IMG/VR virus record: IMGVR_UViG_3300020147_000065
Location: 124,001-188,000 of that record
Length of the DNA stretch: 64,000 bases
Reading direction: 5' to 3' (one strand)
The notes beneath the pieces are model-generated. The model was not told where the DNA came from and searched no databases. It saw only the letters and a list, made by a program, of their open reading frames with translations. Below, one piece after another: positions 2,443 through 48,708 of this stretch. Made by a program: the position numbers and the translations under genes. Within the stretch, counting starts at the first letter, position 1. Each line of letters starts with the position of its first letter.

Positions 2443-4481
2443 TAACCAACCTCTTGTTCTCGCCAGTTCTTACCACCGTCGTATGAAATCAGACGATGGG
2501 CTGGGTTCTCCTGGCCTGTTTGTAAACCGTTTATGATAAGTGTAGCTGTGGCCGATTTCATTGTAACGAGGTCGAAACCATATGTGTTTTCTTTTCTTTT
2601 TTCGGCTACGTGCATTATTGGTCCCTCGTTTTTCTGGATAAACAGGTGCTTACCAGACTCACCGAGGTAGTATCTCGCTCCTTGGTACTTTACGCTATCA
2701 AGAATTTTGATTAACTTATTGCCGTCGAAAATTGATTCTCGGAATACTTCACCGTTAAGGAATTGTTCTTCCCAGTGTTTTCCACCATCATGTGATATGA
2801 ATCGGTGGTTCTGTGCGGCAATCGTCATGTAACCACGACCGGGTGTTTGGTCTTCTTCGATGCGATAGTCGTTATCCTTATCTTTTCTACCCACGGGGTA
2901 AATATAATCCCAGCTATCACGACTTGTCTGATAGAATAACCAGTCACCTTTCTCAGCTAATACCTGTATTTCACCGGTATTCTTACGCGTCACATCAAGC
3001 AGTGCGTAACCTTTTTCTTCATTAAACAAGCTTTTCTGAGCATTATCCTGTTTAATGTAGATATAAGGATCATAGTTTCCCATTCCATCCGAAATGTAAA
3101 CACTGATACCGTTGTTTTCTTGAGTCAACGCATAAATGGGTCCACCCCTTTTACGAACGAGTAGAGCGCCACTTGCACCTTTGATGACTTCCTGATGGCC
3201 GATTTCAGAGGTCATATTTCCGGTGTCGTCGGCTATCCTCTTACCGATTGTGATACTACCGTTTGCGTTAGGTTGCACGAGGTGATGTACACGATTGGGT
3301 GTGCGAACACTGCCAACCACGGTATTACCAAGTTCATAAGAAAACTGCCATTCGGCAGCACGTCCTCTTTGTGTGAAAGCAGTCGAGGAAAAGCCGTCCA
3401 TAATCAATTTAAGTTTAGAACCATTTGGAATTCTAAACTTATAGATTGGACTGTACCACCAGCTACTTACGATACCGCCGTTGTCCGTGAACTCGTTACC
3501 GTTGTTCGGGTCCAGTGACCCGAACTCGGCTCTGTTACCCCAAAGCATTGATTTATAGGTTGGATGATCGGGTGTTAGTTGTCCAGGATTCTTATAATTT
3601 AAAACCGTGTCAAGACCACCAATAGTCATTGTCTGTATTTCACTTCGACAATGGTTGTTATTGAAGATTTGAACGCTGATGGCATCACTATAAGTCACTT
3701 CGCTTCCAGAGACAGCTTTGATGCGATAGAAGTATTCCTGTCCAAATTGCGCGGAAGTGTCCGTAAACAAATAGCGTGTAGTAGAACCGGGCTGCAACTG
3801 CATTCCGCCGGGAGGACCAATATTTGGAGCATTCCAGTTAATCGTAATTTGCCCATCCTGGCTACCATTATCAACTCCTCGGTCAATAAATAATTTAACC
3901 GGAGCAGAAGGATCATTAATGTTCTTTGGTAAGCCATCATAAATAATGTTTACACCCTGTTCAGGGGCACCATAAACGTTACTCTTAGCTATCAGTAATG
4001 GTGGATTAGGAATTTCTACAACATAGTCATCAGGAATACGCTGCACACGCTTGGGTTTATATGCATCAGTTCGATCCTGTCCCTCTGTCCATAAGAAGTC
4101 GTTAAGGCTTGCACCGCCCAAACCACCAAAAATGAAGAACATGGCGTTGATACAAATATAAACGCGCTGCCAGAAGATTGTATTTCCACCTGGGTCTTCG
4201 ATACGATACTCGAATACACCCAATTTATTTTGTAATACGATATTGGGAACACTCATTATAGGCGCGACAGCACTCACGGGAGGTAGCATTCCGGCTCCCT
4301 CCCGTGGATAGGCTTCCCAAAAGATATTTTTCTTTAACTGAAATGCGGTGATGTCTCCACCACCGGTATCAAGCTGATAAACCCATATCTTTCGTGTAAC
4401 AAGAGGAGGACCGAGGTCTAAAACTTCCTCGGCCTCATCTGTTGACTTGAATGGTTTCCAGTTTCCAAAAGGTGCTTGCAT
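2442..4481 (-). CDS. Tail protein with FN3-like and Asp-box/BNR-like motifs
   Basis: 679 aa directly after the tape measure gene; FTDTSAQFGQEYFYRIKAV is FN3-like; two SxDGGxxW Asp-box motifs (SHDGGKHW, SYDGGKNW). Confidence 0.65.
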   Translation of the reverse strand: MQAPFGNWKPFKSTDEAEEVLDLGPPLVTRKIWVYQLDTGGGDITAFQLKKNIFWEAYPREGAGMLPPVSAVAPIMSVPNIVLQNKLGVFEYRIEDPGGNTIFWQRVYICINAMFFIFGGLGGASLNDFLWTEGQDRTDAYKPKRVQRIPDDYVVEIPNPPLLIAKSNVYGAPEQGVNIIYDGLPKNINDPSAPVKLFIDRGVDNGSQDGQITINWNAPNIGPPGGMQLQPGSTTRYLFTDTSAQFGQEYFYRIKAVSGSEVTYSDAISVQIFNNNHCRSEIQTMTIGGLDTVLNYKNPGQLTPDHPTYKSMLWGNRAEFGSLDPNNGNEFTDNGGIVSSWWYSPIYKFRIPNGSKLKLIMDGFSSTAFTQRGRAAEWQFSYELGNTVVGSVRTPNRVHHLVQPNANGSITIGKRIADDTGNMTSEIGHQEVIKGASGALLVRKRGGPIYALTQENNGISVYISDGMGNYDPYIYIKQDNAQKSLFNEEKGYALLDVTRKNTGEIQVLAEKGDWLFYQTSRDSWDYIYPVGRKDKDNDYRIEEDQTPGRGYMTIAAQNHRFISHDGGKHWEEQFLNGEVFRESIFDGNKLIKILDSVKYQGARYYLGESGKHLFIQKNEGPIMHVAEKRKENTYGFDLVTMKSATATLIINGLQTGQENPAHRLISYDGGKNWREQEVG

Positions 4482-7400
4482 TACGTAGCCTTATTTAATT
4501 GGAATCGGTCACGCTTAATGACCTGAACGTTTACAGTATAATCTGAGTCCTGCACGTAGTTGGTTTTAACAGCAGGGGTACCAGCGGCAACCGATGCACC
4601 CTGTATTCTTCCCAAACGCTGCATTGCCTCAGCATCGCCACCAGCTTTGTAGTTACCACGACCAAAGTCGTAAGTATCCGCATGATTCAACCTGTTCATC
4701 AAAGTGTTTGGTAACACATGTGAACCTTGAGGTAACATGACCGCTTCTGGACCACGTTCTCCTACGATAGTTAAACCACCGGCAGCACCGCCTCGTGCTC
4801 TCTTTGGAGTGGCCTCAGCAAGAATTTGTGCTTGTCGAGCTAACAAATCTTTACGACGTGCTCCGCTGAATTTACCAAGCTGTGTATCAGCTAACTCGTT
4901 CAAACGAGCTTCGCTTGAAGCCGAAGCGAGTTGCTTGAGAGCTTCAGGTCCCATTACCGCTGAGTACATGTTTACGAAGTTCTCGTCTTTCAAAGCTTGC
5001 ATACCGGAAGTGTTGATTTTCCAGCGAAGTTGTTCTTTATTCAACTTCTGCAAAGCTTCCATCTGCTCTGACTTCTTAACCTGACCCATAGCCAAGGCAC
5101 CTGTGATTCTATCCACATCTTTTGATGTGTAAGCATCTTCGATTTCTGCGTTGGCAAGAAATTCCTGGATTTTTTCTCCTCTTCTTTCATTTGTAATCAA
5201 ACGACTTTTACGGATTTTATCCATTGCTTCTGCGCGTTTTCTTGCTTTCTCTTCAGGAGTCATGTTGACCTTTGCTTTGAGATCATCTCTCAACGCAATT
5301 AGGTTTTCACGAGCTTCGTCGGTTCGCATTTCTGGAGCGGCAAACGCTCCAAAGCTACGAGTCTTAACTCCTTCTTTATAGTCACCTGTAGCCGCGGCAA
5401 TTTGCTCATCAACAACTGTACCGGCAATTTCTTTACGATAACCTGCGATACTCTTGTCAATGTTCTTGGCACTACCATAGGCATTTCTTGAGAAATAAGA
5501 ACCAAAATATGCACCGGGTAGCGAGAATAGGTTTCCGATGGCACCTACCGCTGTTTCAGCAGCCCACCACAATGGGTTCTTCCATGCTCCATTCTTGAAT
5601 GGATTCTTGGCCCATGTTCCTGCGCGACCATAAGAAGCAAAATTTTCCTGCTTCTGTTTCTCGGCCTGTAGTAATGCAATTGCTTGCATACTTTCTGATA
5701 TTCTACCAATAGGCTTACCGTCTGGTCCAACACCACCCATAGTAGCTTCCCATGCCATAGAATCTCGTTCTGTGACGTTAGCCGCAGAGATAAGACCAAA
5801 TGCAACAGGCGCAGCAACAAGTGATGCGGGTCCTGCTGCGGCAGCAATGCCACCCAAACCAAGCCCACCTAACGCTGCTCCTATCTGAGGTAATGCGGTT
5901 ACAGCAACAGCACCGAGCATTTTATTACCCGCACGTCCGCTTCCAACTCCATAACCAAAACCACTACCTTTGAAAAGGTTTAATGAATCCATACGATCAT
6001 CATACCATGAGTCGGTACCGTAGTTTCCTACTCGGCCCATGCGACGTTCGTGTTCTATTCCTGCTTGTTCAACGTCGAGAGTGTCTTTCATTGATAGACC
6101 GGCACCAAGTACCTGACCGGCAGGACCAAGAGCATTGAATATTTTTCCACCGGTACCGCCACCTGCTCGAAGCAGTGTCGCACCGACACCTTCAGTAGCA
6201 AGTCTGCCTGAAGCAAAGTTTCTACCCCACTGTGAACGTGATAATAGGGACGATACTGTACCACCATCCTTTAATGGTGGTACAGCCATTGTTATAGTAG
6301 CTGCTGTAGTAGCACCATCAACAAGTCTGGCTTGATTACGGTATCTTTCGATAATCTCTCTTTCAGCTTTAGCTCTCTGTTGATCGTTTAATCCGGCATC
6401 AAGAGCTTCCATCTCCCTGGCTTGCGCCTGTTGTAGGTAGATGTGAGCGGCCATTTGAAGAGTACCAACGTTACCATAGGCTGCCCATGCACGACTACGG
6501 AATGCACCAACACCACTTCTTGGAGTACCATCTGCTTTTAGACCCAACGCAAGGAAGTCGTTAGCTGTCATTTGTTGATCACCTAACGCGAAATCCCATG
6601 CTCTTTGTCCAAAGCCGCCGACACCTCTTGTGTTGAAACCACCTTGTAGTCCCGCAACACCGGCACCCTGTTGTGCGACGAAGTCCTGGATGGCAAGACG
6701 ATGGTCACGATAACCGCCATCTTCATAGAATCGCTTGTATGCAGCCGACTTTGATACATCACGAGCACCCGAAGAATCTTGTGTTATTCCTTCGAACATA
6801 CTTAGGAAGTCTGCGATAGAGCGACCACCAAAGATGGCTGTGGTGTTACCAACGAGTCCGCGAAGGCGTCGCATACGATATTCGCCGCGCTCGTTTGCTG
6901 ATGCTCCCTCTGATATGTCTAATCGTGTAGAAGCACCAGTCTTACCCTTTTCGTAGTTATCAGGATCAATTAAATTGTTTAATCTGTTACGTAAATTGGT
7001 TGCGTCACCACCACGGGTCTCGGTACGCACGATACGATCCATAAGATCGTTAATTAATTCTGCGTTTCCTCGTCCGGTGAATCGGTTAACGTCATTGCGA
7101 CCTACCTTGGTGGACTTACCTGTACCGAGTACAGCAGCTTCGTTGGCTTTGATAGCCGCAGCAGCTTCAGTAATAGCGTCAACACCGACACTAGCTGGAT
7201 CAGTGTCAATCCAGTTACCACGAGCGTCTACACCGTCAACAGGCATCCATTCACCCGTGGCCGGCAATCTGCGGAACGATTGTTCCATACCATTAGACAA
7301 ACGAGTACGAACAACATGGTTACCACGATAGCGGATGGCTTTTACACCACCTGCTTCGAGGCCAACCACGGATGGATCAAGAATACCTGATCCAGTATTG

Positions 7401-10400
7401 AACCACTCGTTACCAACAGTTGCGTTTCGGTTGATAGCCTGGCTTACACGGAATGACCTGTCTGCACCAACTAATTCTTCTGATACAAAAGAGAATAGAC
7501 GCTGTTGTTCACTTATTCCTGTTGTGGGATCAACAATACCGGCAAGATCACCGATAGCATCACTGAAGCCGAAACCGGCCAACATAGTTTTTCCGCCACC
7601 AACATCTGTACCGGCGAGAATATTAAAACCAGCGCCTCTATGATTAAAAGATGTGGGATTTCCTGTACCGTCAAGTGTAACACCAAATGACTTACGCATT
7701 GTTTCCATTACGTCGTCAAATGATAGGTATCTGTCAGCCGTAGGATGACTGTGCATAACTGTTTGGTTAGCATTGTAATCCCAACCGGTTAATGGATCAA
7801 TTGAAACACTGGATGCATTTCCTGTGTTTGACGATAGAACACCGCGCCCTGCTTGCCATAACACGGCTTGTTCGTTGCCTGTACCGAGCATGGAAGCCAT
7901 TACATCGGCTGTAGCGGTTGAGTGGAAATCGCCGCCTACGGCCCCAGTAGCCGTAGAAGCGGCCTGAGCAAAGGCGAGACGATTACCATATCTTCCGGTA
8001 AACGAACCAGTTGCGTGAGCACTACGAGCAGCAAGAACTACCTGCGCTCTTTCCATATCCTGATCAATTTGAGTATTACGCTGTAGTGCCTGATCGTGTG
8101 CTCTACGCGCGGCATTGTATTGTCTGGTTATCTCAGGATCATTTTCACCAGCATTTATACGGGCGAACAATTCGTTGCGTCGTTCTTGTAGGATGTCTAA
8201 TTGCGTCTTTCCATCGGGACCACGCAGACGAAGCAGATCGCGCTCAATACGAAGTTCATTGAGGTTATGAGCAGCTTCCTGGGCTTCCAGATGACGCAGT
8301 TGATTAGATTTATCCGCACCCAGTGGTCGGTTTAATACCTCAGATATATCACGTTCTTTACGTAAGCTACTTAGTAGATCAGTATCAGGTGCCTGAACAA
8401 CAGATGAACCCGAAAGGATACTTGCTATATCATGAGTACCAGTAGCATAAGTTCTCGATTGTCCACCAAAGGCATTGAACCCGAAGGTCATGCGTGAAAA
8501 CGCTTCCAATCCTCTCTGTGAGAAGCTGGATGCAAGTGCGGTTGTCTTACCGGTTTGAATATCAGGACTCCACTCACCAAAACGAGCGCGGTAGGGTTCA
8601 CCAAGTCGAGTAACAACCTCATTCCATGCGTTTGAACGACGCAGGAAGTTGCTGCTATACTGATCTTGCATCTGCGTATAAAACGCATCTTGTAATGCTG
8701 TATTTTTTCCAGCTTGACGTTGTGCTGCAATATATTCTGCAATACGTGGTTCACTTTGCCATGCAATTAAAGTATTAGGATCAACTGTGTGAGATACACT
8801 TCTCCCAGTCTCAGCTTGCTGTTGTAAAAACGAATCAAAGGTTATAAAAGAGTCTAACGTTGAGTTACGATTTGGCCCACCCACAAAAAGGTTATGGGCC
8901 TTAACTCTTTGTAATAAATCGGCTCTATCTGAATCAGATATACCTCTTTTTAATTCAGGTGGTAATCTTTCTTCAGGTACTTCAAGTAAAACATTTCCAT
9001 TATTATCAAGAAGCGTTTTACCTCTCTGTACCCTAAATCTAGTATCTCTTTCCGCAGAGTCTTCTCTACCAATAGTTGTGGTATAGTTTTCAGGAGAATC
9101 CCCGAAACCGCTTAGTGAACTACCTGTAACAGCCGAGAAAGGTAATCCATGACCAAAGTAGGTATCATTAACATTCTGGTGAATCATGAAGTTACCTGAC
9201 GCATCAGTGTACTTCAACATAGAGTCGGCCCAAACCTCAAATGATCTTTCACCAAGTACTGCTGGTACTCCACCACCACCACGACGGCGTTCAACTAAGT
9301 TTTCCTTGTTGGCTGCTTGTTGTTTCTTTAGATTTTCTAAAAGAGTTTCTCCACCTACGTCAGAAAGGTCTACCCAATCTTGATTGTAAGCTTTTTCACG
9401 GAAACTATTTAATCTTCTTATTGTTTCTTCATTGTCCGGTGATGCAAGAGCAGATTGTTGTAATTGCTGCGCTAATTCCCGCACGAAAATTAACGGGTTA
9501 GCACCACTTTCTCCGTAATTATAACGACCGGAAATTAACCCTTCAACTCTTGGGTCTATGGGGGCCAATTCAGCAGACAGTTGACTTGTTAAAGGACCAG
9601 CTCCTCCTTCACCTGCAATAGCCTCAGCTAATAACATGTAGTTGCGAACATCTGTTTTAGGTGCTTTTCCTTCAGCTTCAAATTGAGAGAATGCTTCAGT
9701 AAATATACCACCCCATTTACCGGCAATTGTTGATGGGGTTCGAGGAACTGTATTAATTTGTGATACAAGATGATTATAGGTTTTTTCAATATAAGAAGCT
9801 TTAGTTGCTTTATCAACCTTCATCCCTTTTGCTTTTAGGTTTTCGTCAACAAAAGTCTTAGCTTGAGCACGTAATTCCTGTGAACGAGTTAGGGCCTTGG
9901 AAGTTATCTCACGATTTGCTTCCATTTCTGTCTTTTGCGCTCGAATAGCGTTGAGTTGAAGTTCGTCTTTTACTACATTCCAGGCGTCATTACCGGTTAA
10001 TGTAGGATCAGCTTGTACCTTCTCCAACATTTTCTGTATAGGATAAGAATAAAATGCTCCTTGTGCATTCGTCTTTCTATCTAAAATACCGAAAACGTGG
10101 GGATCAACATCCATTCCTAATTCTGCCATTAGGAAGCTTGGAATTCCAGTTAAATCAGCAACAGCTCTTCTTTGCTGTTCTTCGTTGAAACTTTTAAGAT
10201 CAGTTCTAAAACCAACTGTACTCGGATGTTGAATCAAAGCCGTCTGCATTTTTTCATGCACAAGATGTTCAGCAGATAAAGAAGGAACACCTTCAAATCC
10301 ACCAATAAGACCACGCATTATTGCATGACCTTGATTATCAAATTCTGTATTTGCTTTTAATGATGCAATAACTCCGGTTTGTGCATTGGTTCTTGCGGCA

Positions 10401-12410
10401 ACACTATCCTTTTTCTTAGCAGCAGCAATAATACTGCGATGTTCATCAGTTCCAGCTAATTTTTTAGCCGTATCCAGGTCCACACTTGTACGATACATGG
10501 ATTGCATATATCGGTCTTGTAAAACCTTGATACCTTTGGCTGCGTTTTCACCCGTAGATTCTTTAATGTCGGACCACAGTTCACCAACAGGTTTATCAAA
10601 TAGTTCTCTTTCAGACGTAGCATCACCGATGGCTTTATGTGGAATACCGGAATTACCAAAGTTATAAGCATCATTGTCTCTAACACGACCTAAACGCTCA
10701 ACTTTATGCATACGGTGATTAGGAATAACATGAGAGCCTTCCGGTAGAACGACAGCCTCAGGTCCACGCTCACCAACAATGGTAAGACCACCTGATTTAC
10801 CACCCATAGCACGGTTTTCTACTTCGTAAAGAGGCTTTGAACGATCTCTCTGAATGTCCGGCTGACCAGGAGAACGTAATTCTCTAATTCTGATGGGAGG
10901 ACCACCAGTATCATCCGGTGCTTCGATTTGACCGGAAGCAATAGCACGAAGAATAGGACGGTTATCTTCGCCTGGGAATTGTAGACGCTCTTTTTGACGA
11001 CGCTCAATTTCAGCACGAGCAGCCTGACCGAACAAGTCCTTTGTGTCAAGTTCTTGACGAGAGGTGCCGAAACGCTCTTTCATCTCGTCGTTTTCTTTAC
11101 TGGACTGTCCTTTCAAGTATCTACCAAGCATGTAGGTACCAAGAGTAGCAGCACCAACAAGTGGCATAACACGCTTCATCATGAAGCCGCCAAAGCTACC
11201 CTGGAACTGTCCAGACATCAATGAAGCAGTATACATAGCTGTGCTGAAACGCATGATAGGTCCAGCAGCCGCACCGAACATGAGGGCCGTAAACTGGATT
11301 TCGGGGCCTAAGCCACCGAAAGCCTTAACCATCTTGTTGGCGATAGGGATAACGTCTCGGCCCATCTTGATGGCACCGAAGATAACGTCCTGCATAGCAA
11401 TACCAAAGTCAGCAAGTTCTTTGGTATAGGCTGCCATAACCAGACGCCCCTGGTTGGCCGCAGAAGTAGGATACGACTTTAAGAAGTCACCCTGAGCGTT
11501 CTGCGTCTGGTTCATGATTTCACCGAAGGCTGCAAGAACCTTCTGTTGCTTATTTAATTCAGAACCAACTTCAGCAATACCGTTTTTGTATGCGTAGTTC
11601 TTTAGTGTTGTCTGGTCAAGCGACACACCATAAGAGTACAAAGCACGGGTGTTACCGATCATACCTGACGCGAGGTTGGTCATAACCCTTTCTACAGGTA
11701 AGTCATAGTACGAGGACATGTCAATGCCCAACTGTACCATAGCCTTCGACATTTCCAGAGCTTCTCCGCGAGGAATCTTCAAAGCTGTGGCCAGGTTCAT
11801 GAAGATAGCAGCCTGACGACGAACCTCATATTCGTTCATCGAACTGGCTTTACCAAGACGTTCAGAGAAGTCCTGAATATCTTTGTACATGTTACCGAAT
11901 GTACGACCGGCAAGGTTTTCTGATTCTAATACGGCAGAACCGAACTTTACTCCGAAAGCGGCTGCCGCCATTTCCATCGAGGAGAATGCTTCACCGACAA
12001 ACTGTGCTCCAGTGGCAAAAGCCATACTGTTTGTTTGGGCAGTTGTGCCAAGGCGTCCGTACTGTTGACCAACGGTACGGAGCTGGTTCATCATCTGGTT
12101 ATCAGGTGTTATCGTGTGGGCTTTTTATCCCTCACTTCTTATAGTTTCCTATAAGTTCAGCATATATTTTCATCCTAATAGGATGTTCGGCACTCGTGGA
12201 GGGATTATATTCTTGAAAGTTTCACCCTCTATGCGTTACACTGATCTGAACTCTTTAATTTTCAGATTTAGCTCGGTATTCCCATGGTTACCTTTAGGGT
12301 TCACCGATTTTGCCGAATTTTCACCAATAAATTACTTTATTGGGGACCATAACCTTAGTGATTTAGCCACTTAACACAAATCTAGTTGCAAGGATGTCGG
12401 TGATTTGCAA
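4481..12410 (-). CDS. Tape measure protein, spliced (exon 1 12410-12365, exon 2 12102-4481)
   Basis: 2537-aa ORF with TMP-like N-region (MVQLGIDMSSYYDLP...LASGMIGNTRAL) and GG..VGERGPE motifs; removing the intron gives in-frame MQITDILATRFVLSG-Y-NQMMNQLRT from a TTG start preceded by AGAGGT. Confidence 0.88.
12103..12364 (-). ncRNA. Group I self-splicing intron (262 nt, no internal ORF) in the tape measure gene
   Basis: Minus strand shows P3 UUCGGCA/UGCCGAA, P4 UCGGU/ACCGA, R-like UGUAACGCAUAG, S-like AAAAUAUAUGCUG, terminal G, and IGS GGUUAUGGUC pairing both exon ends (GGCU and AUAACC) with a U-G pair at the 5' splice site. Confidence 0.88.
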
Positions 12411-12415
12411 TCTGT

Positions 12416-13213
12416 TTACCTCTGTAAAACTTTATTCCATTTTCTTTGTAGTAAAGGAAGTCTTGAGTCGACCTGTGCTACAAAATCTTTTGTTTGCTCT
12501 TTAGTAAATCTCAATCTAAAAATAGAATTGAAAGCACCAAATGAACAAGGATACTGTACCATTGTCCCAATCCAACTGACCACTTTTGATGTTCCCAAGA
12601 AACTCATAGTTTTATTAGTTTCTACGTATCCATCACCATCAAATAATCCACATACGAATGCTATACTACATTCATGATTCAAATTTGTTGGTGGCTCAAG
12701 TATTAAAGACTTAGCAGGGATAATTCCAAAGTTTTCCTTCAGATCTTTAATCCACTGTGCTGCTCCACAAACAGTTAATCTTGTCCAGGGTCGAGGATTT
12801 GTTTTAGAAAATCCTCTATCATTCATGCCCTCATACAATTTCCCGTTAAAACCTACCTGAGACGCAAAAAGTTCCAGATGAACTTTATCTTTGCTATCCA
12901 GTTGGACTGATACTTGTTTATTTCTTGGGGTATCAATTATCCAACCGTCTGCGGCTAAGAACCCTGCCCAATAACTATTCAAAGGTGTTGGGTAAGTAAA
13001 GAAAGAAGAATCATACTCTAATTTCTTGTTCTTTTTACCGATAGCTGATTTAGCACATCTGGAACATTTCCAGTTTTCTTTTACGTATTGACGCTTTGTT
13101 TCTTTCTCAAGATTACAATCAGGACATTTCACGCAGACTAGTTTGTTAGAGCCTGATGAAAGTTCTAAGGGATTGTAACCAAAAGTAGACAAAGTTTTCT
13201 CGAACATTATCAT
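12416..13213 (-). CDS. Free-standing LAGLIDADG homing endonuclease with N-terminal zinc ribbon
   Basis: Two motifs YWAGFLAADGW and FVCGLFDGDGY; N-terminal CPDC...CSRC. Confidence 0.9.
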   Translation of the reverse strand: MIMFEKTLSTFGYNPLELSSGSNKLVCVKCPDCNLEKETKRQYVKENWKCSRCAKSAIGKKNKKLEYDSSFFTYPTPLNSYWAGFLAADGWIIDTPRNKQVSVQLDSKDKVHLELFASQVGFNGKLYEGMNDRGFSKTNPRPWTRLTVCGAAQWIKDLKENFGIIPAKSLILEPPTNLNHECSIAFVCGLFDGDGYVETNKTMSFLGTSKVVSWIGTMVQYPCSFGAFNSIFRLRFTKEQTKDFVAQVDSRLPLLQRKWNKVLQR

Positions 13214-13227
13214 AGCAAACCAGACAC

Positions 13228-13740
13228 TTAATAGTTTTTCAGGTTGCTCTTTATCTTATCCAAGTTCTTACAGTATTCTTCTACACCCTTCATTGTAAAA
13301 GTAGTATGTACAGCGTCTTTTGTTGTGTAACCTAAATCTGCGATTGTTGCGTAGATGTTGTATAAACGCTCCAATCGGATTGCCCGTTTTTCGTTAAGTG
13401 GAGAACTGTAGCTTCTATCGAGCACAAGTAATCGGGCACCGACAATTTCTCGTATATTATCTGAAGTAGAAAGACCTTTTTCGTCAATAAGTCTTCGTAC
13501 TTCTTTTTCGTTCAGAAGAATACCTTCATTTCTCATCTCTGACGTTTGTCCAACAAGTAAGCTTCGTAAGATTAAATGAGCCACAATATCATGTGGTTTA
13601 TCAAATATTTTAGCTATCCACACAACGAGATGAACACCTGTGTGCGCGTTCTTACGAGCGTCGGCTTCCGTAAAGCCGACGGCTTTGAAGAGATGAAAAA
13701 ATCTGATAAAGTGTTTTTGAGCCAAGAATTCAAGTAACAT
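13228..13740 (-). CDS. Hypothetical protein in tail module
   Basis: 170-aa ORF packed in the operon between chaperone-like genes and the endonuclease. Confidence 0.6.
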   Translation of the reverse strand: MLLEFLAQKHFIRFFHLFKAVGFTEADARKNAHTGVHLVVWIAKIFDKPHDIVAHLILRSLLVGQTSEMRNEGILLNEKEVRRLIDEKGLSTSDNIREIVGARLLVLDRSYSSPLNEKRAIRLERLYNIYATIADLGYTTKDAVHTTFTMKGVEEYCKNLDKIKSNLKNY

Positions 13741-13742
13741 TA

Positions 13743-14435
13743 TTAAGTCCTGTCTACAATCTTTACCTGAGGTGCCAGAGGATCAGATTCTCGTGGGGGA
13801 TCAGGTAACGTAATCCACAGCTTTTCAGGTAATTCTAAAGCTTTCATAATAGGTTTAACTAATATGAGTAGAACCTGTTCTGTGCTTGTCTGCCAGTTCC
13901 TTGCTATACCTTCAATGGTACGCATTGCTTGTACAAGGTCGTAGCAATAATCATACGCTTCGAGGGCGTCTTCTGTTCCGGCTAAAGACTTCACGATGTC
14001 GGTAAAAAATCCACTTTTCCTGGCTTCATCCACAAACGCGAATTCGTATGGACTCATTGCCAATGTAATCAATAGATTATTTAATCGAGCATTACCGTGA
14101 GGATTTAAAGTTTTGATTTGATGAAGCATGGCCACGTTTGATGGACCATAATCTTCTCTTGACCAGAATTGACGTGCTATGTCTTTATTTTGATTGAATT
14201 CCTTGACACCATAACAAAAATAGAGAATGCTGATTTCCTCGGCAATCTCTTCATCTGTCTGGAAAGTGGTCCAGTCCGTCAAATCAAAATGGGTTTCCTG
14301 GATATTATCTATCAATGCCCTCCCCTTTGAGGGGAGGGTCACGATAGTAAATTCGAGACGTGAAGCTTTATGCAAGAATTTGAATTCTAATCGCTCCAAC
14401 GCCTTCTTTACGTGGACAAGTCCTGTGGAAGACAT
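13743..14435 (-). CDS. Tail assembly chaperone-like protein (paralog 2)
   Basis: Position between tube-like genes and TMP; shares FxHxASxxEFxxxxxPS, GVxE and IKxLNP with 14435-15166. Confidence 0.5.
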   Translation of the reverse strand: MSSTGLVHVKKALERLEFKFLHKASRLEFTIVTLPSKGRALIDNIQETHFDLTDWTTFQTDEEIAEEISILYFCYGVKEFNQNKDIARQFWSREDYGPSNVAMLHQIKTLNPHGNARLNNLLITLAMSPYEFAFVDEARKSGFFTDIVKSLAGTEDALEAYDYCYDLVQAMRTIEGIARNWQTSTEQVLLILVKPIMKALELPEKLWITLPDPPRESDPLAPQVKIVDRT

Positions 14436-20449: not shown

Positions 20450-22186
20450 TTAGGTATTATTTGACCCTCCAGCGACCGATTGGGACGCTACTGAGCGACT
20501 AATTGATGTTCCGGGGCTATTTCCACCGGATGCTGGAGCGGTGCCTGAAGCACCGCGAACAGCCTTAGCTGCTTGTGATGTTTGTGGGGTTGCCGAAGCT
20601 CCAGAAGGTACAATATACTTCTGGGCAACAGCGGATAACGTCTCCGCTTCCTCCTTCATTTCTGCAAGTTTTCGCTTGCGTTCTTCTTCACGCAACGTCT
20701 CAATTTCAGTTAAATCTTCTTCACTATATCCTTCTTTTATAAGAACATATTTTAGAGGAATATCTGCTCTCATTGCCGCTGCATATGAAATATATTTTTC
20801 ACGATTTGTAATAGCCTGGTCATATTCGGTTAGTTCGATAACCGGACGAGGATTAATCGTAAAGTCGAGATCACCTTTTGCGTAGGAATCCATATTGAAC
20901 GATAAGAATTTCTTCTGTTGTTCATTTAGGACAGCCCAGCCAGTGCCCTGCGCACGTTCGTTGGCTCTCATTCCACCAATTGCTACAAGCATTCTAAAAA
21001 GAGAAATAGTAGCATGGTCGTAATTCTTTGAAGCCTGTCTAACAGCGTGAACCAAGTCACCGAGAGACTTACCAACTGCCGGCCCCGTGGTTTGCGATAA
21101 TGTTTTTAGATAAGCATATACAGTAATCTCAGGGTGATCGTCAAGGATTTCCTGCCATGTATCTTTTAATACACCTACTGTTTGAGCAATATCAAGGTTA
21201 CCATCTAATTTATGAACTGAACCGTTTTCCGATGCTACTAAAAGAAACATGTCTTCGAGTAGGATAGGGCTGCCATCCAATTCAGAAGTAGGAGGGTTAA
21301 CGGTGCCCATGCCAGCAAGCAGGTTAGGAGATACGGATTGCTTGCGAAGATACATGCGCAAGCGAGTATAATCTGAGTTATATTCCTCGATTTTTCTCCA
21401 GTCTCTAATTGCAGGTTTTCCGGGAAGGAGATGAACACCAGGATCATTGTGTTTGCACCACACTAATGGACAAAAACCATAAGGGTTTTCATAGACAGGT
21501 GGAAGACCTTCATATCCGTAAGGATCGTCATTACGGAAAGTACGAATTTCTGTCTTAGTAACTTGCTTTTTCTTTGTGTAATATTCCTGTTTATCAGGGT
21601 CCCAAACTTCGATTACCTTCTCATACTCGATTACGTTTCCACGCGGGTCGAACTTAACGTCGGTAATTTGTTCCGGGCGAAGAACAGTCGGATATACCTG
21701 ACCACGGGTGAGGTCATCTGTGGCTTCTACGGGACCGTCTCCAAGAGAAGCACAATAGGTGATCCAGGTTGTTATATTACTTTCCCAGTTACCCCACTGC
21801 CAGATTTGACCAATAGCCCGACGTAGTTCGTCGGGCGTTTTGTCACTTAGAGGAATAGCAAGAGGAATATTATTGGCTACAGGATAGCCTGTGCTTGATA
21901 GATAGCCAGGATAGATATGAGATGCGTAAAACGAAACTACTCGTGAGAAAGGATTTTTAACACAGATAGTTTTTGGATGTAAGTCACGCTGCTTGAGATA
22001 AGGCCCCCACTTCTTGTTATCAACAAAAATGGTATTATCCAAAGCATTCTGCATCACATAATACTGAAACAGACGCTTTTCGTAAGTGCTGTTTGCAGGG
22101 TTGATATTTTCAAAGTTGTACCAGCGCGACTTGTATGAACCAAACAACTCGCTACCCATTCTGGCCACTCTACCTAATAGACTCAT
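20450..22186 (-). CDS. Portal protein
   Basis: 578 aa directly downstream of TerL; YENPYGFCPLVWCKH resembles the SPP1-type portal NPxGxxPxV motif. Confidence 0.85.
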   Translation of the reverse strand: MSLLGRVARMGSELFGSYKSRWYNFENINPANSTYEKRLFQYYVMQNALDNTIFVDNKKWGPYLKQRDLHPKTICVKNPFSRVVSFYASHIYPGYLSSTGYPVANNIPLAIPLSDKTPDELRRAIGQIWQWGNWESNITTWITYCASLGDGPVEATDDLTRGQVYPTVLRPEQITDVKFDPRGNVIEYEKVIEVWDPDKQEYYTKKKQVTKTEIRTFRNDDPYGYEGLPPVYENPYGFCPLVWCKHNDPGVHLLPGKPAIRDWRKIEEYNSDYTRLRMYLRKQSVSPNLLAGMGTVNPPTSELDGSPILLEDMFLLVASENGSVHKLDGNLDIAQTVGVLKDTWQEILDDHPEITVYAYLKTLSQTTGPAVGKSLGDLVHAVRQASKNYDHATISLFRMLVAIGGMRANERAQGTGWAVLNEQQKKFLSFNMDSYAKGDLDFTINPRPVIELTEYDQAITNREKYISYAAAMRADIPLKYVLIKEGYSEEDLTEIETLREEERKRKLAEMKEEAETLSAVAQKYIVPSGASATPQTSQAAKAVRGASGTAPASGGNSPGTSISRSVASQSVAGGSNNT

Positions 22187-24855
22187 CTTCTATAGCCTCC
22201 ACCGAAGTGTCGTTGCATATAATCTGCGGTTGCAGATGTGATTATAGTTTTACCGGACCTCACTTCGGCTTCTGCCATTGCCAGATTAAATGCGTCCGCA
22301 TCGTCAGGAGATTCTTTCAGACGCTTTTTCATGAGGTCTTTCTTCTCTACTTCCCGACGGGTTTCTTTGATACCAGGACGCAAAATATATTTGGCGGCTT
22401 TTAGCTGACGGCCTAAAATAGCCCAGGATTCTCCACCTTCGCATTCTTCTATGCGTGAAATGTCAATTCCGGCCTTTAAATCACGATCTGTAGAATCTAC
22501 ATTATTAGCTTTATCAGCCGAGATAAACCAAAGTTCACTACGACGATTAGGATAACGATCCTTATTGTAAGCCTGTGCAGAAGAGTCTACTCCGACGAAA
22601 TTAAAGTTTCCTTTGTGAGTATATACAGCGTTGTTACCTGTAATATCAATCATGATGGGAACTGTTTCAGCAGTCATTCCCGCATGATCTCTTCCCCACA
22701 CTCCGGCCAAAACCTTTAATCGGTCAGCCGTCATAATTTCATCCCAACCGTGATGTCGCTCATGCCAGAGAACAGTCTTCCCTCTGCGAACAACGATGGC
22801 CGTTTTGTCGGCACCACGTCCAGCAGGGTCACAACCGATTTGAACAGGTTCGTCAATGTCTTCCGGTTGCTGTTCTTTACAGGCTTCCCACATGGCCTCA
22901 GACCACAGGGTATTATCAGAGCCGGACGGCCAACGACCAAGAACACGAGGTTCGAAGTCACTGGCAGCCCGTGGTCGGTAATAATATCTTTCCCATGACT
23001 CAGGCAACTCATATTGTTTACCAAAGTAGGTAATAATACGAGGTGGCCATTCAAAGTCACCAAGTTTGGCTGCGTCAGAGGAAATTATTAAACAGTTTTC
23101 CACTATACGGTCATTCACCCATTGAAGGTTCATGTCAATTCCAGGAAAAGGAATTCTTGATGGATCACTGTCGAATAAAAGGTCGGCAAGCACGTTAGGA
23201 TGGTTTAAGGCAGAAAGCCTGATAACCGTCCATGTTTTATTGTTTTCCGATTCCCAGTAAGCTCTCGATGAGATGTCTACAGGGTTAAGAAGACAAAGCC
23301 ACTTCGCGTTGGGGCGAATTAACATACCACGGGCGTCTTCCCAGAAGTCAGCCATGATACCGTCCGCCTCATCGAAGATAAGCATCAGGTTTTCAGATTT
23401 ACGACCACGGAAACCAGCACCGGTAGCAGCCACTAAACCTTCGGCATAATGCGTAACGCTACTCTGCATACGAGAAGCCGAGGGTTTTAAATCCCACATG
23501 CTTTCAGGAAGACGATAACGATGGTTGCGAACTTCTTTCCAGATGATGTCATCAACTGACTTCTCTGTTGGAGCAGTGGTAATCGTAATAGATTCCGCGA
23601 AAGCATCGTAATGCCAGTTGGTCAGTGCCCCGGCGAGATAGCTATTATGCTCATATAAAGAAGTAAGATAGCTTTCAGGACCAGGAACACAGATAGCAAC
23701 TGTTCGCTGTTTTCCCTGCGGTACGATCTCGGATACTTTCTCCCAGTATGTTCCGGGAGGTGCGTCTTTTAATCGCCAGTCAAGACGATTATCGGGATTA
23801 CCTTCTGCAAGAAACTCATTATCTTCGAATACACGAACGTAGTCTTCGATATTGAGTACACGAGCAACCCAGAAATCCTCGCCGTCCTTTTTGTAGACCT
23901 TGCAGGAAATACCGAACTTTAGTAGAGCAAATGCGAGATCACGGATCAATTCTTCAGAACGATGATAGAATTTAACCTTAGCTTCAACATTGTTCTTAAC
24001 AACGAGGGTATTGCAACTAAGCAGGGTCTTGATGAATAGACGTAGCTGGTCTTTCTTTAAAGTGAAGATGGCTTCAGGAATACGACGCTGTTTAAATGAT
24101 TCTGTAATCAGATACTTATTGAAAAGATGCAGGATTGGCCCGGCACCGACAATCTTCATGCGGCTTTGTGTCTGATCATAGAAAAGATCACCAATTTTAC
24201 CATCAAGAAGACCGACAAGTTGTGCGAACTGTCTCTCGCCTTTTTTAATAAGAACGACTTCTTTATCACGAATGAAACAGGATGTAAGCAGATGTGCCAA
24301 AAGTTTGACCTCATCTTCCTCAATTTCATCCTGCCCAAAGGCGGGAAATTCACGAGTTACTGCAACCAGATCACCTGTGGATATGCAACCCACGGATGTC
24401 CATCCGTTCACTGTAGTCTTGAACTGTTTTCCTGTCTTTACATTCTTAGCGGTCCATAGCGGATGCTTATTGTTGACGATAACACGGCGACCGGACTCGG
24501 TGATTACTTCATAAACGTCTTCATATTCGTTCCATTCGGCTGTTGCTTCAACTTCACGAATTCCGTCAGGTGTAGAGGTTAACGTTTTAAATGTTTTCCC
24601 CACAACCTGTTTGGCCTTTACTTTACGGCCATCCGAAAGGTAAACCCAGTCGGATTCTGCTTTACATTTACCAGATGAGTGGCAAGAAAGCACCATGACT
24701 CGTTTATTCTCGATTAGAGCGCGAGTAATCGCCTCTTGGTCGGGAGTAATACGAGTTCTTAGTTGGTCATTAATATATGCAATTGGGTCATCCGCGTATT
24801 CAGGAAATCGAGCCGTCTTCGAGGGCTGAGTGAGAGTTCTCACTATGTCCCCCAT
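22183..24855 (-). CDS. terL: Terminase large subunit containing an intein
   Basis: Walker A SCHSSGK/S split by the intein, Walker B LIFDEADG, nuclease IGCDPAGRGAD and C-terminal SPDDADA; likely start MGDIVR at 24855 (ORF open from 24930). Confidence 0.92.
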   Translation of the reverse strand: MGDIVRTLTQPSKTARFPEYADDPIAYINDQLRTRITPDQEAITRALIENKRVMVLSCHSSGKCKAESDWVYLSDGRKVKAKQVVGKTFKTLTSTPDGIREVEATAEWNEYEDVYEVITESGRRVIVNNKHPLWTAKNVKTGKQFKTTVNGWTSVGCISTGDLVAVTREFPAFGQDEIEEDEVKLLAHLLTSCFIRDKEVVLIKKGERQFAQLVGLLDGKIGDLFYDQTQSRMKIVGAGPILHLFNKYLITESFKQRRIPEAIFTLKKDQLRLFIKTLLSCNTLVVKNNVEAKVKFYHRSEELIRDLAFALLKFGISCKVYKKDGEDFWVARVLNIEDYVRVFEDNEFLAEGNPDNRLDWRLKDAPPGTYWEKVSEIVPQGKQRTVAICVPGPESYLTSLYEHNSYLAGALTNWHYDAFAESITITTAPTEKSVDDIIWKEVRNHRYRLPESMWDLKPSASRMQSSVTHYAEGLVAATGAGFRGRKSENLMLIFDEADGIMADFWEDARGMLIRPNAKWLCLLNPVDISSRAYWESENNKTWTVIRLSALNHPNVLADLLFDSDPSRIPFPGIDMNLQWVNDRIVENCLIISSDAAKLGDFEWPPRIITYFGKQYELPESWERYYYRPRAASDFEPRVLGRWPSGSDNTLWSEAMWEACKEQQPEDIDEPVQIGCDPAGRGADKTAIVVRRGKTVLWHERHHGWDEIMTADRLKVLAGVWGRDHAGMTAETVPIMIDITGNNAVYTHKGNFNFVGVDSSAQAYNKDRYPNRRSELWFISADKANNVDSTDRDLKAGIDISRIEECEGGESWAILGRQLKAAKYILRPGIKETRREVEKKDLMKKRLKESPDDADAFNLAMAEAEVRSGKTIITSATADYMQRHFGGGYRR
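23644..24666 (-). mobile_element. Intein (341 aa) in TerL Walker A with degenerate LAGLIDADG domain
   Basis: Starts CKAESDWVYLSDG, block B VIVNNKHPLW, ends YEHN followed by Ser; removal restores SCHSSGKSYLAG. Confidence 0.9.
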
Positions 24856-25558
24856 CAAGGACTCTTGAAGCTTTCGTTGCGGTTTCCACGAGAATTCTTG
24901 TGGCAAGGTCTTTATCCTCCAAACGATCAAAAACTACTCCTCGCAACTCGCCCATTACGCGGTTGATGAGGATTTTCACATCAGCGGCTCGCATCATCTG
25001 ATCCAATTGGATATTACGTTTATGCTGAGCCTCTACAAGGTCTTTCTTAGTGCGGATCATACCTTTAATTTCGTCCATCAGGGCGAAATCACGTCCCGCA
25101 CTTTCGATGATGCCACCCATTTGGGCAAAAAGGGCGTTGAATTTGTTCCAGTCCTTTTGATTGGCAGCATCTACACATTTTTCATAATGCTTTAAAATTC
25201 TGGCAATGGCTCCGCCACCTTCGCCGTCACCATATTCGAATTTACTACATAACTCATCAATTAGAGCCTGTGTAAGAGCAATTTCAGGCATGAGTTCGAG
25301 AAGCAGAGGATCATTGGCGGCTTCCTGCATCTTCGGGCCTAATCTTGTTTTCTTTAATGATTCAATGTAACGTCCATCCACGTATGTACCACTCTCCGCT
25401 CCAGATTTACTTCTTCCACCGTGGAAATAGCAAACCTTTTTACCTTTCATAGCCACGGCACCACAGGGCACAAGTTCTTCAGCTTTATCCTTGCGTCTCT
25501 TGTGACCCTGACACCTGGGAATCCATTTGTTTATGTCCCTTCCCTTCGGGTTCGGCAT
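24800..25558 (-). CDS. Terminase small subunit-like protein (HGGxSTG zinc-finger domain)
   Basis: RC...PC...CYFHGGRS motif; immediately upstream of TerL. Confidence 0.7.
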   Translation of the reverse strand: MPNPKGRDINKWIPRCQGHKRRKDKAEELVPCGAVAMKGKKVCYFHGGRSKSGAESGTYVDGRYIESLKKTRLGPKMQEAANDPLLLELMPEIALTQALIDELCSKFEYGDGEGGGAIARILKHYEKCVDAANQKDWNKFNALFAQMGGIIESAGRDFALMDEIKGMIRTKKDLVEAQHKRNIQLDQMMRAADVKILINRVMGELRGVVFDRLEDKDLATRILVETATKASRVLDGGHSENSHSALEDGSIS

Positions 25559-48183: not shown

Positions 48184-48708
48184 ATGAGAAACATTGTTTT
48201 CAGAAACAGCCTCATAAGCGAGCATCGTGCAGGACAGTTGCTTCGCAGTTGGAAAAATCAGTTACGCGGCAAGTTAAGCCCTAAAAGACGTAAAGAAGTT
48301 AACGGTTTGCTTAACGATATGCGTAAAGCATTAAAGACCGTTGGCCCCTATGAGCGCGATGGTGTGTTTACTGTCGAAGAAGTTATGGCTTTAGTGGGAA
48401 CAGGCCACGGACACGTTAATCGTCGCCCTATTTCGTATGACACTAAACGTCTAAAAGTGTTCAAGCGAACGGGCACAGTATGTGTCGCGTGTGGTTTACC
48501 TGCCTCACACTTTGCTTTAGAGCGTTGCTGGGAACAAGATGGTGATTTGTGGCACTTCAATTTGTATGGTTTGAGAGACGGTAAAGAAATTCTCTTTACT
48601 CGTGACCACATTAAACCACTTGCCAGGGGTGGAACCGATTGTCTCGATAATCAGGAAACAATGTGCTGCACTTGCAATTTCAAAAAGGGCGACAAGTGGG
48701 AAGAGTGA
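48184..48708 (+). CDS. HNH endonuclease
   Basis: CVACG...TRDHIKPLARGGTDCLDNQETMCCTCNFKKG. Confidence 0.9.
   Translation: MRNIVFRNSLISEHRAGQLLRSWKNQLRGKLSPKRRKEVNGLLNDMRKALKTVGPYERDGVFTVEEVMALVGTGHGHVNRRPISYDTKRLKVFKRTGTVCVACGLPASHFALERCWEQDGDLWHFNLYGLRDGKEILFTRDHIKPLARGGTDCLDNQETMCCTCNFKKGDKWEE

What the first reader, a model, noticed from the sequence alone, without database searches (positions are those of the whole stretch)
12365..13213. Free-standing LAGLIDADG endonuclease ~50 nt from an ORF-less intron: possible collaborative homing
Seen: the endonuclease stop (12416) overlaps the TMP ribosome-binding site, and the intron insertion site is 46 nt into TMP; the intron encodes no ORF. Known: collaborative homing between a free-standing endonuclease and an adjacent ORF-less intron is described for the cyanophage S-PM2 psbA locus. 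Inference: the enzyme cuts the intron-less TMP 5' end and the intron protects this allele.
Basis: partly seen in the sequence, partly recalled or inferred. Interest (0 to 1): 0.62.

Follow-up and report, generated by a model that had tools for sequence, protein, structure and literature searches.

The report
Endonuclease gene beside a relocated intron
A soil jumbo phage has a DNA-cutting "homing" enzyme gene 51 bases upstream of a small gene-less self-splicing intron at the start of its tail tape-measure gene, and a related phage has the same pair with the intron 34 bases further upstream, which shows how such an intron can change its site.

Summary
ORF 13213..12416 (-) is an intact two-motif LAGLIDADG endonuclease with an N-terminal 4-Cys zinc ribbon. 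Its stop codon directly follows the GAGG ribosome-binding site of a TTG start at 12410. After 46 nt of coding sequence comes a 262-nt group I intron, 12364..12103 (Rfam RF00028, 56 bits). The intron has no ORF. Its guide sequence GGUUAUGGUC pairs 10/10 with the ligated junction GGCU|AUAACC.

One relative (JGI contigs L005 and L006; tape measure about 50% identical) has the orthologous endonuclease (35% identity) in the same place and a homologous intron. There the intron sits after nt 12 of the gene, not nt 46, and its guide sequence fits that site 12/12. Each genome therefore serves as the uninterrupted reference for the other's splice junction.

The window's intron begins with the 8 nt that end exon 1 in the relative, and it keeps that relative's guide sequence as a relic. 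I infer that it moved 34 nt downstream by a DNA route and was retargeted.

Collaborative homing is the best reading (about 0.5). Cleavage specificity is untested. The only hint is that the endonuclease ORF's flanks resemble the exon junction. The arrangement is a known kind; the documented relocation is the new part.

The parts
12416..13213 (-). Free-standing LAGLIDADG homing endonuclease gene, 265 aa. It has an N-terminal zinc ribbon (C30-x2-C33 ... C50-x2-C53) and two LAGLIDADG motifs (AGFLAADG about aa 83-90; CGLFDGDG about aa 188-195).
   Evidence: D89 and D194 are invariant in a 38-sequence alignment. The AF2 model has pLDDT 85. The best fold matches are monomeric LAGLIDADG enzymes I-Tsp061I, I-DmoI, I-SceI, I-AniI and the bI3 maturase. 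The ORF lies wholly upstream of P1, so it is outside the intron.
12419..12422 (-). Shine-Dalgarno GAGG for the tape-measure start, inside the last two codons of the endonuclease gene.
   Evidence: The ATG at 12094 that gene callers would choose has no such motif.
12365..12410 (-). Tape-measure exon 1: TTG start plus 45 nt (MQITDILATRFVLSG and the first base of a Tyr codon). It ends in the U that forms the U.G pair at the 5' splice site.
   Evidence: The peptide DILATRF(V/I)LSG is encoded downstream of the intron in L005. Of 8 changed codons, 7 are synonymous and 1 is conservative.
12103..12364 (-). ORF-less group I intron, 262 nt, ending in G12103.
   Evidence: RF00028 at 56 bits. Across five related phage introns, 36 of 57 core pairs keep pairing through changes on both sides. 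The 3' tail GAUAACA..UG is shared with L005, phi116 and the bajarodcaudo introns.
12345..12354 (-). Internal guide sequence GGUUAUGGUC. GGUC pairs with the exon 1 end GGCU (P1); GGUUAU pairs with the exon 2 start AUAACC (P10).
   Evidence: 10 of 10 positions pair, 2 of them G.U. The local minimum-energy fold forms this P1 and the P2 hairpin.
12357..12364 (-). Relic: the first 8 nt of the intron, AAAUCACU, are identical to the last 8 nt of exon 1 in relative L005.
12321..12331 (-). Relic of the L005-type guide sequence (UUUAUUGGUGA; L005 has AAUAUUGGUGAU). It now forms the 3' strand of P2 and J2/3.
4481..12102 (-). Tape-measure exon 2. It begins AU AAC CAG AUG AUG. With exon 1 the protein is 2555 aa.
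   Evidence: tblastn matches annotated tape measure proteins. Relatives are P0002 and P0003.
13222..13231 (-). TTAAGTGTCT, 8 nt before the endonuclease ATG. It matches the last 10 nt of exon 1 (TTAAGTGGCT) at 9 of 10 positions.
   Evidence: shuffle P 0.0014. Together with TAAACAGATT at 12418..12409, which matches exon 2 nt 2-11 at 8 of 10 (P 0.06).
13228..13740 (-). Upstream ORF, 170 aa: a diverged paralogue of tape-measure residues about 88-215.
   Evidence: The L005 counterpart is 59% identical to its own tape measure residues 88-215 (E 5e-53). The window copy matches the L005 copy (E 4e-7) and the L005 tape measure (E 8e-6).

Best explanation
The locus is a two-part mobile cassette at the 5' end of the tape-measure gene. 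One part is a free-standing LAGLIDADG homing endonuclease gene. The other, 51 nt downstream, is a small self-splicing group I intron with no ORF. Shown or strongly supported: the intron is a genuine folded member of a phage intron family. It splices GGCU|AUAACC and so fuses a 15-codon first exon, which carries the only good ribosome-binding site, to the rest of the tape measure. The endonuclease has an intact active site and lies outside the intron. The same pair exists in a relative, with the intron 34 nt further upstream. Inferred: the enzyme cuts intron-less tape-measure alleles of co-infecting relatives at or near nt 46/47. Repair then copies the endonuclease gene, exon 1 and the intron together, since they span only about 1.1 kb. 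The intron splits the recognition site and so protects its own genome. This is collaborative (trans) homing. Also inferred: the window's intron descends from one at the upstream site. A break at the new site was repaired illegitimately from an intron-bearing copy, which carried 8 nt of donor exon along. An insertion of roughly 20 nt then supplied a new guide sequence and P2.
For: The predicted N-termini are colinear (window MQITDILATRFVLSG-Y-NQMMNQLRTVGQ; L005 MQIT-DILATRFILSGHNQMLNQMRTVGQ), and each is uninterrupted where the other is split. Both guide sequences fit their own junction (10/10 and 12/12). The endonucleases are full-length orthologues (35% identity, E 4e-54), and both keep the acidic residue in each motif. 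L005 is reproduced exactly by a contig from a second sample. It is the only RF00028 match in 221 kb, and only one other LAGLIDADG domain and four HNH ORFs occur in that record. GC falls to 0.35-0.38 over 12100-13300, against 0.45-0.50 in the 5' part of the tape-measure gene. The endonuclease ORF's flanks resemble the two halves of the exon junction, anchored exactly at the splice sites (P 0.0014 and 0.06). In phi116, a homologue of this endonuclease is embedded in an intron of the same family. A relic of donor exon at the 5' end of the intron is what DNA-based illegitimate repair predicts, and reverse splicing would not carry it (review PMC3984707).
Against: There is no cleavage or splicing experiment. 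No RNA data exist for this phage. Only one relative with DNA was available; a third lineage (P0002) could not be read. The flank resemblance was looked for deliberately but is modest, its right half is weak, and L005 shows nothing comparable. The closest homologues of the endonuclease elsewhere are free-standing and have no intron nearby, so this clade does not need an intron partner. If the two endonucleases share one target, it cannot span both intron sites, which are 34 nt apart.
Confidence: 0.5

Rival explanations
1. The two elements are independent neighbours. The endonuclease is an ordinary free-standing homing gene whose target lies elsewhere, for example at the empty gene boundary where it is inserted or further inside the tape-measure gene. 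The intron is an unrelated passenger. They are adjacent because both kinds of element accumulate at conserved essential phage genes, and because they are inherited together.
For: Close homologues are free-standing between tightly packed genes with no intron. Homing genes are reported to cluster around tape-measure, terminase and capsid genes (PMC10448857). The intron site is not conserved between relatives while the endonuclease position is. The tape-measure paralogue upstream points to recombination further inside the gene.
Against: It is the only intron in 221 kb and it lies 51 nt (14 nt in L005) from one of about six endonuclease-like genes. The pairing is retained across about 50% protein divergence. 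The flanks resemble the junction. The exon relic implies a DNA break at the present site.
Confidence: 0.28
2. The LAGLIDADG protein serves mainly, or also, as a maturase that helps the neighbouring small intron fold and splice in trans. It is kept for that reason rather than for mobility.
For: The fold search ranks the bI3 maturase and the bifunctional I-AniI among the best matches. LAGLIDADG maturases are known, including a bacterial one (PMC3984707). The intron is short, and in L005 it lacks P2.
Against: Both catalytic aspartates are invariant. Related introns of this family exist without any such protein nearby (L003, L004).
Confidence: 0.1
3. The ribozyme lies in a 5' untranslated leader. 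The tape measure starts at ATG 12094 and the 15-codon ORF is meaningless.
For: Gene callers chose that ATG in the window and the equivalent one in L005.
Against: There is no ribosome-binding site before ATG 12094 but a good one before TTG 12410. The 11-codon segment shows 7 synonymous changes, 1 conservative change and 3 identical codons between genomes, although it lies on opposite sides of the intron. Splicing restores a colinear frame in both genomes, and both guide sequences match the junctions.
Confidence: 0.04
4. Both elements are decaying relics. The intron still splices but no longer moves, and the endonuclease is inactive.
For: Homing elements commonly decay once fixed (PMC3984707). 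The endonucleases have diverged faster (35% identity) than the tape measure (about 50%).
Against: Full-length ORFs without stops are kept in two lineages, with invariant catalytic and structural residues and a confident fold.
Confidence: 0.08

Closest known systems
Cyanophage S-PM2 psbA intron with free-standing F-CphI, and the T3/T7-like phage case (collaborative or trans homing; Zeng et al. 2009 and a companion study, as cited in PMC3984707 and PMC10448857)
   Same: [quoted passage not shown]
   Different: The enzyme family differs: it is LAGLIDADG here, while F-CphI uses an Endo VII-type motif (PMC6083498). The host gene is a tape measure. The endonuclease is upstream and only 14-51 nt from the intron, sharing its 3' end with the host gene's ribosome-binding site. 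Cleavage is untested here. The intron site differs between relatives.
Vibrio phage ICP1 terminase intron with an adjacent T5orf172 endonuclease, and the ICP1 tape-measure intron with an internal HNH gene (PMC10448857)
   Same: A free-standing endonuclease beside the short N-terminal exon of an intron-split structural gene. Tape-measure genes are a recurrent intron host.
   Different: The enzyme families differ. ICP1 splicing was shown by RNA-seq and RT-PCR; none is shown here. No shift of splice site between relatives was reported in the passages read.
Mammaliicoccus phage phi116 intron with embedded LAGLIDADG gene (PV389079.1, locus L002)
   Same: The same intron family (71% identity over 177 nt, with the same 3' tail) and a homologous endonuclease (27% identity) placed directly 5' of the P3-P9 core.
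   Different: In phi116 the ORF lies between a 273-nt upstream ORF that may be exon 1 and the ribozyme core, so it appears to be inside the intron. Here a translated exon and a complete P1 (plus P2 in the window) separate the two. The phi116 5' splice site was not located, and Rfam found nothing there at E up to 1.
T4 mobE / I-TevIII trans homing (PMC2790892)
   Same: A free-standing endonuclease mobilises a neighbouring intron that cannot move by itself.
   Different: There the intron carries a defunct endonuclease gene, and the helper is an HNH enzyme in a different gene context.
Ectopic transposition of group I introns by illegitimate double-strand-break repair (Parker, Belisle and Belfort, cited as ref. 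88 in PMC3984707), as opposed to reverse splicing
   Same: The intron is found at a new site close to the old one, and donor exon nucleotides travelled with it.
   Different: That work was a laboratory system. Here it is a natural pair of genomes, with an additional change of guide sequence. The event itself is inferred, not observed.

Membership tests
Group I intron (Rfam RF00028) | Covariance-model score above the curated threshold over the full model | tested here: met
   56 bits against a gathering score of 50, model positions 1-253, E 1.8e-13. The L005 homologue scores 39.7 bits, E 6e-9, below threshold because P2 is missing.
Group I intron (Rfam RF00028) | U.G wobble pair at the 5' splice site in P1, terminal G at the 3' end, and a guide sequence that also pairs with the 3' exon (P10) | tested here: met
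   U12365 pairs with G in GGCU/GGUC. G12103 is the last intron base. GGUUAU pairs with AUAACC. In total 10/10 pairs form. L005 gives 12/12 at its own junction.
Group I intron (Rfam RF00028) | Conserved core helices supported by compensatory changes | tested here: met
   In five related introns, 36 of 57 predicted pairs keep pairing through changes on both sides. P3 is UUCGGC/GCCGAA in the window and UCCAGC/GCUGGA in L005.
Group I intron (Rfam RF00028) | Self-splicing in vitro or spliced mRNA in vivo | not testable with these tools
   No RNA run holds this phage. Only the source DNA contig could be laid on the region.
LAGLIDADG homing endonuclease, monomeric two-motif type | Two LAGLIDADG helices, each ending in a conserved acidic residue | tested here: met
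   AGFLAADG and CGLFDGDG. G84, D89, G90, G189, D192, D194 and G195 are invariant in 38 homologues.
LAGLIDADG homing endonuclease, monomeric two-motif type | Alpha-beta-beta-alpha-beta-beta-alpha fold repeated twice | tested here: met
   The AF2 model has pLDDT above 90 over about residues 70-265. Foldseek gives probability 1.00 to I-Tsp061I, I-DmoI, I-SceI and I-AniI. Pfam PF14528 scores above its cut-off.
LAGLIDADG homing endonuclease, monomeric two-motif type | Site-specific cleavage of a long target | not testable with these tools
   This needs an enzyme assay.
Collaborative (trans) homing pair | The endonuclease gene is outside the intron and the intron has no ORF | tested here: met
   The ORF ends 51 nt before the first intron base. 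The intron matches the full Rfam model from P1 to P9 downstream of it. The longest sense-strand ORF in the intron is 22 aa.
Collaborative (trans) homing pair | The endonuclease cuts the intron-less allele at or near the intron insertion site | not testable with these tools
   There is only an indirect hint: the ORF flanks resemble the junction halves (P 0.0014 and 0.06).
Collaborative (trans) homing pair | The intron-containing allele is resistant to the enzyme | not testable with these tools
   The intron does split the candidate site, but resistance has to be measured.
Collaborative (trans) homing pair | Endonuclease and intron occur together in relatives | tested here: inconclusive
   They occur together in the one relative with DNA (L005 = L006). 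In the P0002 contig a 288-aa ORF and a 352-nt gap precede the tape measure, which is compatible, but no DNA was available. No relative lacking either element was found, so presence and absence cannot be correlated.

The most novel reading that the evidence does not exclude
The two genomes record how a collaborative homing pair is made and remade. The endonuclease changed its target, or cut a second site. An ORF-less intron from 34 nt upstream was captured at the new break by illegitimate repair and brought 8 nt of donor exon with it. A short insertion then gave it a new guide sequence and a P2 helix, while the old guide sequence survives as a relic. This would be a natural, sequence-level example of DNA-based ectopic transposition and retargeting of a group I intron driven by a free-standing endonuclease. 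It also predicts that each phage's enzyme cuts the other phage's uninterrupted site.
Probability: 0.33. Interest if true: 0.8.

Novelty: new variant of a known kind. Interest (0 to 1): 0.64.

Why it matters
How ORF-less introns and free-standing endonucleases come to share a target, and how group I introns reach new sites, are stated as open questions in the review PMC3984707 and in PMC10448857. [quoted passage not shown] This locus offers two natural alleles of one gene in which the same intron lineage sits at two sites 34 nt apart. The guide sequences are matched to each site, and a relic indicates the direction of the move. That makes the question testable with two small synthetic substrates and two enzymes. 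It would also be, as far as the papers read here show, a LAGLIDADG example of such a pair. Finally, it corrects the tape-measure gene model: the true start is 316 nt upstream of the start a gene caller picks.

Tried and rejected
1. My first 3' splice site (G12121, the most upstream in-frame G) was rejected. Alignment with L005, the shared 3' tail and the P10 pairing all place it at G12103.

2. An alternative 5' splice site after U12357, using the old helix UCACU/GGUGA, was rejected. It leaves an in-frame UAA and would form a pseudoknot with the new P1.

3. The whole-window Rfam run at gathering threshold found nothing. Runs over loci L002-L004 and over L002 2900-4500 also found nothing, although blastn shows related introns there. 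I treat these as filter losses.

4. Searches for more relatives gave only the window itself or distant tape measures: viral contigs with a single protein and with an alignment, and metagenome contigs. A search with a conserved 179-aa neighbour gave only contigs of about 1 kb.

5. DNA of the P0002 contig could not be fetched.

6. No RNA run was found. Laying contigs showed only the source contig and a 151-nt identical fragment of the endonuclease gene in a second soil study. There was no intron-less form.

7. The L005 endonuclease flanks show no resemblance to its junction.

8. Two energy scripts crashed: the first printed nothing and the second printed only the local minimum-energy fold, which is the only part used.

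Exon 2 was searched by reference. Exon 1 (15 codons) is too short to search. The junction codon (T + AT = Tyr) was read from three bases only.
Full report
**Setting.** The window is bases 124001-188000 of a 221,108-bp IMG/VR phage record from soil, estimated 89% complete. Around the finding all genes run on the minus strand in a head-and-tail order: terminase, major head protein (phrog_3990), several unnamed ORFs, then a 2537-aa ORF. tblastn matches that ORF to annotated tape measure proteins of many phages.

**The observation.**
- ORF 13213..12416 encodes 265 aa. It matches Pfam LAGLIDADG_3 above its cut-off and phrog_4645 'endonuclease'.
- In an alignment with 37 homologues, the glycines and the acidic residue of both motifs are invariant (G84, D89, G90; G189, D192, D194, G195).
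- An AlphaFold model built from that alignment has mean pLDDT 85, and above 90 from about residue 70 onwards.
- Foldseek places the model among monomeric two-motif LAGLIDADG enzymes and maturases: I-Tsp061I, I-DmoI, I-SceI, I-AniI and bI3.
- The first 60 residues carry a C-x2-C ... C-x2-C pattern. The relative's protein keeps this pattern and scores weakly as a zinc ribbon.
- The stop TAA is at 12418..12416. GAGG at 12422..12419 lies 8 nt before TTG 12410.
- From that TTG the frame reads MQITDILATRFVLSG and then meets a stop.

**The intron.** A 700-nt Rfam scan finds RF00028 on the minus strand at 12374..12138. It covers the whole model at 56 bits, against a gathering score of 50. A search of the whole 221-kb record finds this match and no other. 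The earlier whole-window run at gathering threshold had missed it, which I attribute to the speed filters. blastn of the region against 50,697 phage records matches only the intron. These are related introns in Bacillus, Staphylococcus, Clostridium, crAss-like and other phages, up to 76% identical. An alignment of five of them gives a consensus fold in which 36 of 57 pairs are kept through changes on both sides. The intron has no sense-strand ORF longer than 22 aa.

**Splice sites, fixed by a relative.** A word search with the first 400 residues of the tape measure found two close relatives, P0002 (56% identity) and P0003 (50%). P0003 lies on JGI contigs L005 and L006. These come from two samples and are identical over 15,848 nt.
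- In L005 a 273-aa ORF directly precedes the tape measure. It is a full-length orthologue of the endonuclease (35% identity, E 4e-54).
- Two bases after its stop comes GTG CAA ATC ACT. This is followed by 244 nt that align with the window's intron and score 39.7 bits against RF00028 with P2 deleted.
- Then comes GAT ATT TTA GCC ACA AGA TTT ATT CTT AGC GGC CAT AAC CAG ATG.
- So the codons for DILATRF(V/I)LSG lie before the intron in the window and after it in L005.
- They differ at 11 of 33 bases: 7 codons changed synonymously, 1 conservatively, and 3 are identical. The peptide is therefore translated in both lineages.
- In the window the 5' splice site is after U12365. The only 3' site that gives a product colinear with L005 is G12103|A12102 (..GGC U|AU AAC CAG AUG..).
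- The predicted N-termini are MQITDILATRFVLSG-Y-NQMMNQLRTVGQ in the window and MQIT-DILATRFILSGHNQMLNQMRTVGQ in L005.
- The guide sequences agree. Window GGUUAUGGUC (12354..12345) pairs 10/10 with GGCU|AUAACC. L005 AAUAUUGGUGAU pairs 12/12 with AUCACU|GAUAUU. Each has the U.G wobble at the splice site.
- The local minimum-energy fold of the window's 5' region forms this P1 and the P2 hairpin.
- Both introns end with a covarying hairpin (GUGAGGG/CCCACAC in the window, AUGGGAG/CUCCCAU in L005) and the tail GAUAACA..UG.

The intron is therefore 12364..12103 (262 nt), and the tape measure is 2555 aa, starting at TTG 12410. Exon 2 was searched by reference, and exon 1 is too short to search.

**The intron has moved.** Homologous introns sit after nt 12 (L005) and after nt 46 (window) of the same gene.
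- The window's intron begins AAAUCACU, identical to the last 8 nt of L005 exon 1.
- About 30 nt further on it keeps UUUAUUGGUGA, the counterpart of the L005 guide sequence. This now forms the 3' strand of P2 and the joining segment.
- Between these two relics lies a segment of roughly 20 nt that L005 lacks. It holds the new guide sequence and the 5' strand of P2.
- Both strands of the old P1 thus lie inside the window's intron. This gives the direction of the move: from an L005-type site to the present one.
- Reverse splicing would not carry exon bases. Illegitimate repair of a DNA break is known to do so (review PMC3984707).
- The window's own exon now reads ..AUCACC at the old site. This replaces the old U.G with a C-G pair and may prevent cryptic splicing. 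That last point is my speculation.

**Does the endonuclease work with the intron?** Points in favour:
- The pair is kept together across about 50% tape-measure divergence.
- This is the only intron in the record, and it lies 51 nt (14 nt in L005) from one of about six endonuclease-like genes.
- GC drops to 0.35-0.38 across exactly the endonuclease and the intron.
- In Mammaliicoccus phage phi116, a homologue of the enzyme sits inside an intron of the same family, directly 5' of the P3-P9 core.
- I made a deliberate test of the kind used for T4 I-TevII (described in PMC3984707). The 10 nt ending 8 nt before the endonuclease ATG, TTAAGTGTCT, match the last 10 nt of exon 1 at 9 positions (shuffle P 0.0014; only two other such 10-mers exist on the minus strand of the 64-kb window, one of them exon 1 itself). 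The 10 nt starting at its stop codon, TAAACAGATT, match exon 2 bases 2-11 at 8 positions (P 0.06).

Points against:
- There is no cleavage or splicing assay, and no RNA data.
- There is only one informative relative.
- L005 shows no flank resemblance.
- The nearest homologues elsewhere are free-standing between tightly packed genes, with no intron-sized gap.
- A single recognition site of LAGLIDADG size (my general knowledge of the family, not tested here) cannot span both intron sites, so the two enzymes would need different targets.

I put collaborative homing at about 0.5 and independent neighbours at about 0.28. A maturase role (which could coexist with homing), decayed relics, and a leader-only ribozyme share the rest.

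**Comparison with what is known.** A free-standing endonuclease next to an ORF-less intron is described for cyanophage S-PM2 psbA/F-CphI and for T3/T7-like phages (PMC3984707), and for the ICP1 terminase (PMC10448857). Introns in tape-measure genes are also known (ICP1). The arrangement is therefore a further example of a known kind, here with a LAGLIDADG enzyme placed upstream and almost touching the intron. What I did not find in the papers read is a pair of natural alleles in which such an intron occupies two nearby sites, with matched guide sequences and a relic of the old site.

**Other observations.**
- The ORF just upstream of the endonuclease is a paralogue of tape-measure residues 88-215. 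This is clear in L005 (59% identity) and much decayed in the window. It may be a scar of the recombination that installed the cassette.
- The terminase ORF carries a LAGLIDADG domain that is probably an intein.

**Verdict.** The novelty is a new variant of a known kind. Interest is 0.64.

Noticed in passing
window 13228-13740 (-); L005 6322-6879 (+): The ORF directly upstream of the endonuclease is a paralogue of tape-measure residues about 88-215. In L005 it is 59% identical to its own tape measure, and 54-56% to the other two lineages. The window copy is barely recognisable. It may be a scar of an illegitimate recombination that brought the cassette, or a functional spin-off of the tape-measure N-domain.
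   Followed up: partly
window 22183-24930 (-): A 915-aa ORF matches terminase large subunit (phrog_2, aa 449-886) and carries a LAGLIDADG_3 domain at aa 294-368. This is probably an intein with its own homing endonuclease.
   Followed up: partly
window about 48592-48696 (+), and three places outside the window (G000:C1 38701-38829, 195164-195292, 197560-197697): Four ORFs with HNH domains are present, so the 221-kb genome carries several other candidate free-standing homing endonucleases.
   Followed up: no
window 12100-13300: GC falls to 0.35-0.38 across the endonuclease gene and the intron, against 0.45-0.50 in the adjacent tape-measure coding sequence.
   Followed up: yes
L004 (bajarodcaudo virus 1, PQ006092.1) about 3001-3351 (-): A related ORF-less intron sits close to the 5' end of a crAss-type major capsid gene. 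That gene is further split by pieces annotated as intron-associated endonucleases. The first capsid piece starts at profile position 18, so a mini-exon is expected upstream.
   Followed up: no
P0002 contig (JGI sample 3300048101), genes at 4895-5761 and 6114-13997: The third relative has a 288-aa ORF with weak HNH_2 and faint HTH hits, then a 352-nt gap before its tape measure, and no counterpart of the 170-185-aa paralogue. This may be a different endonuclease at the same locus. No DNA was available.
   Followed up: no
window 12951-13101: A 151-nt contig identical to part of the endonuclease gene occurs in a soil metagenome from a second study (run X2). The phage, or at least this gene, is therefore not confined to one sample.
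   Followed up: no
window 4481-12094 (-), tape measure about aa 440-470 and about aa 2470-2500: The motif GGLTIVGERGPEAV.LP.GSHV.PN occurs twice, once near residue 450 and once near the C-terminus.
   Followed up: no
window 1-64000: The Rfam scan of the whole window at gathering threshold returned nothing, although the intron scores 56 bits against a threshold of 50 when a 700-nt stretch is scanned. Other windows scanned only in the fast mode may hide small introns.
   Followed up: yes
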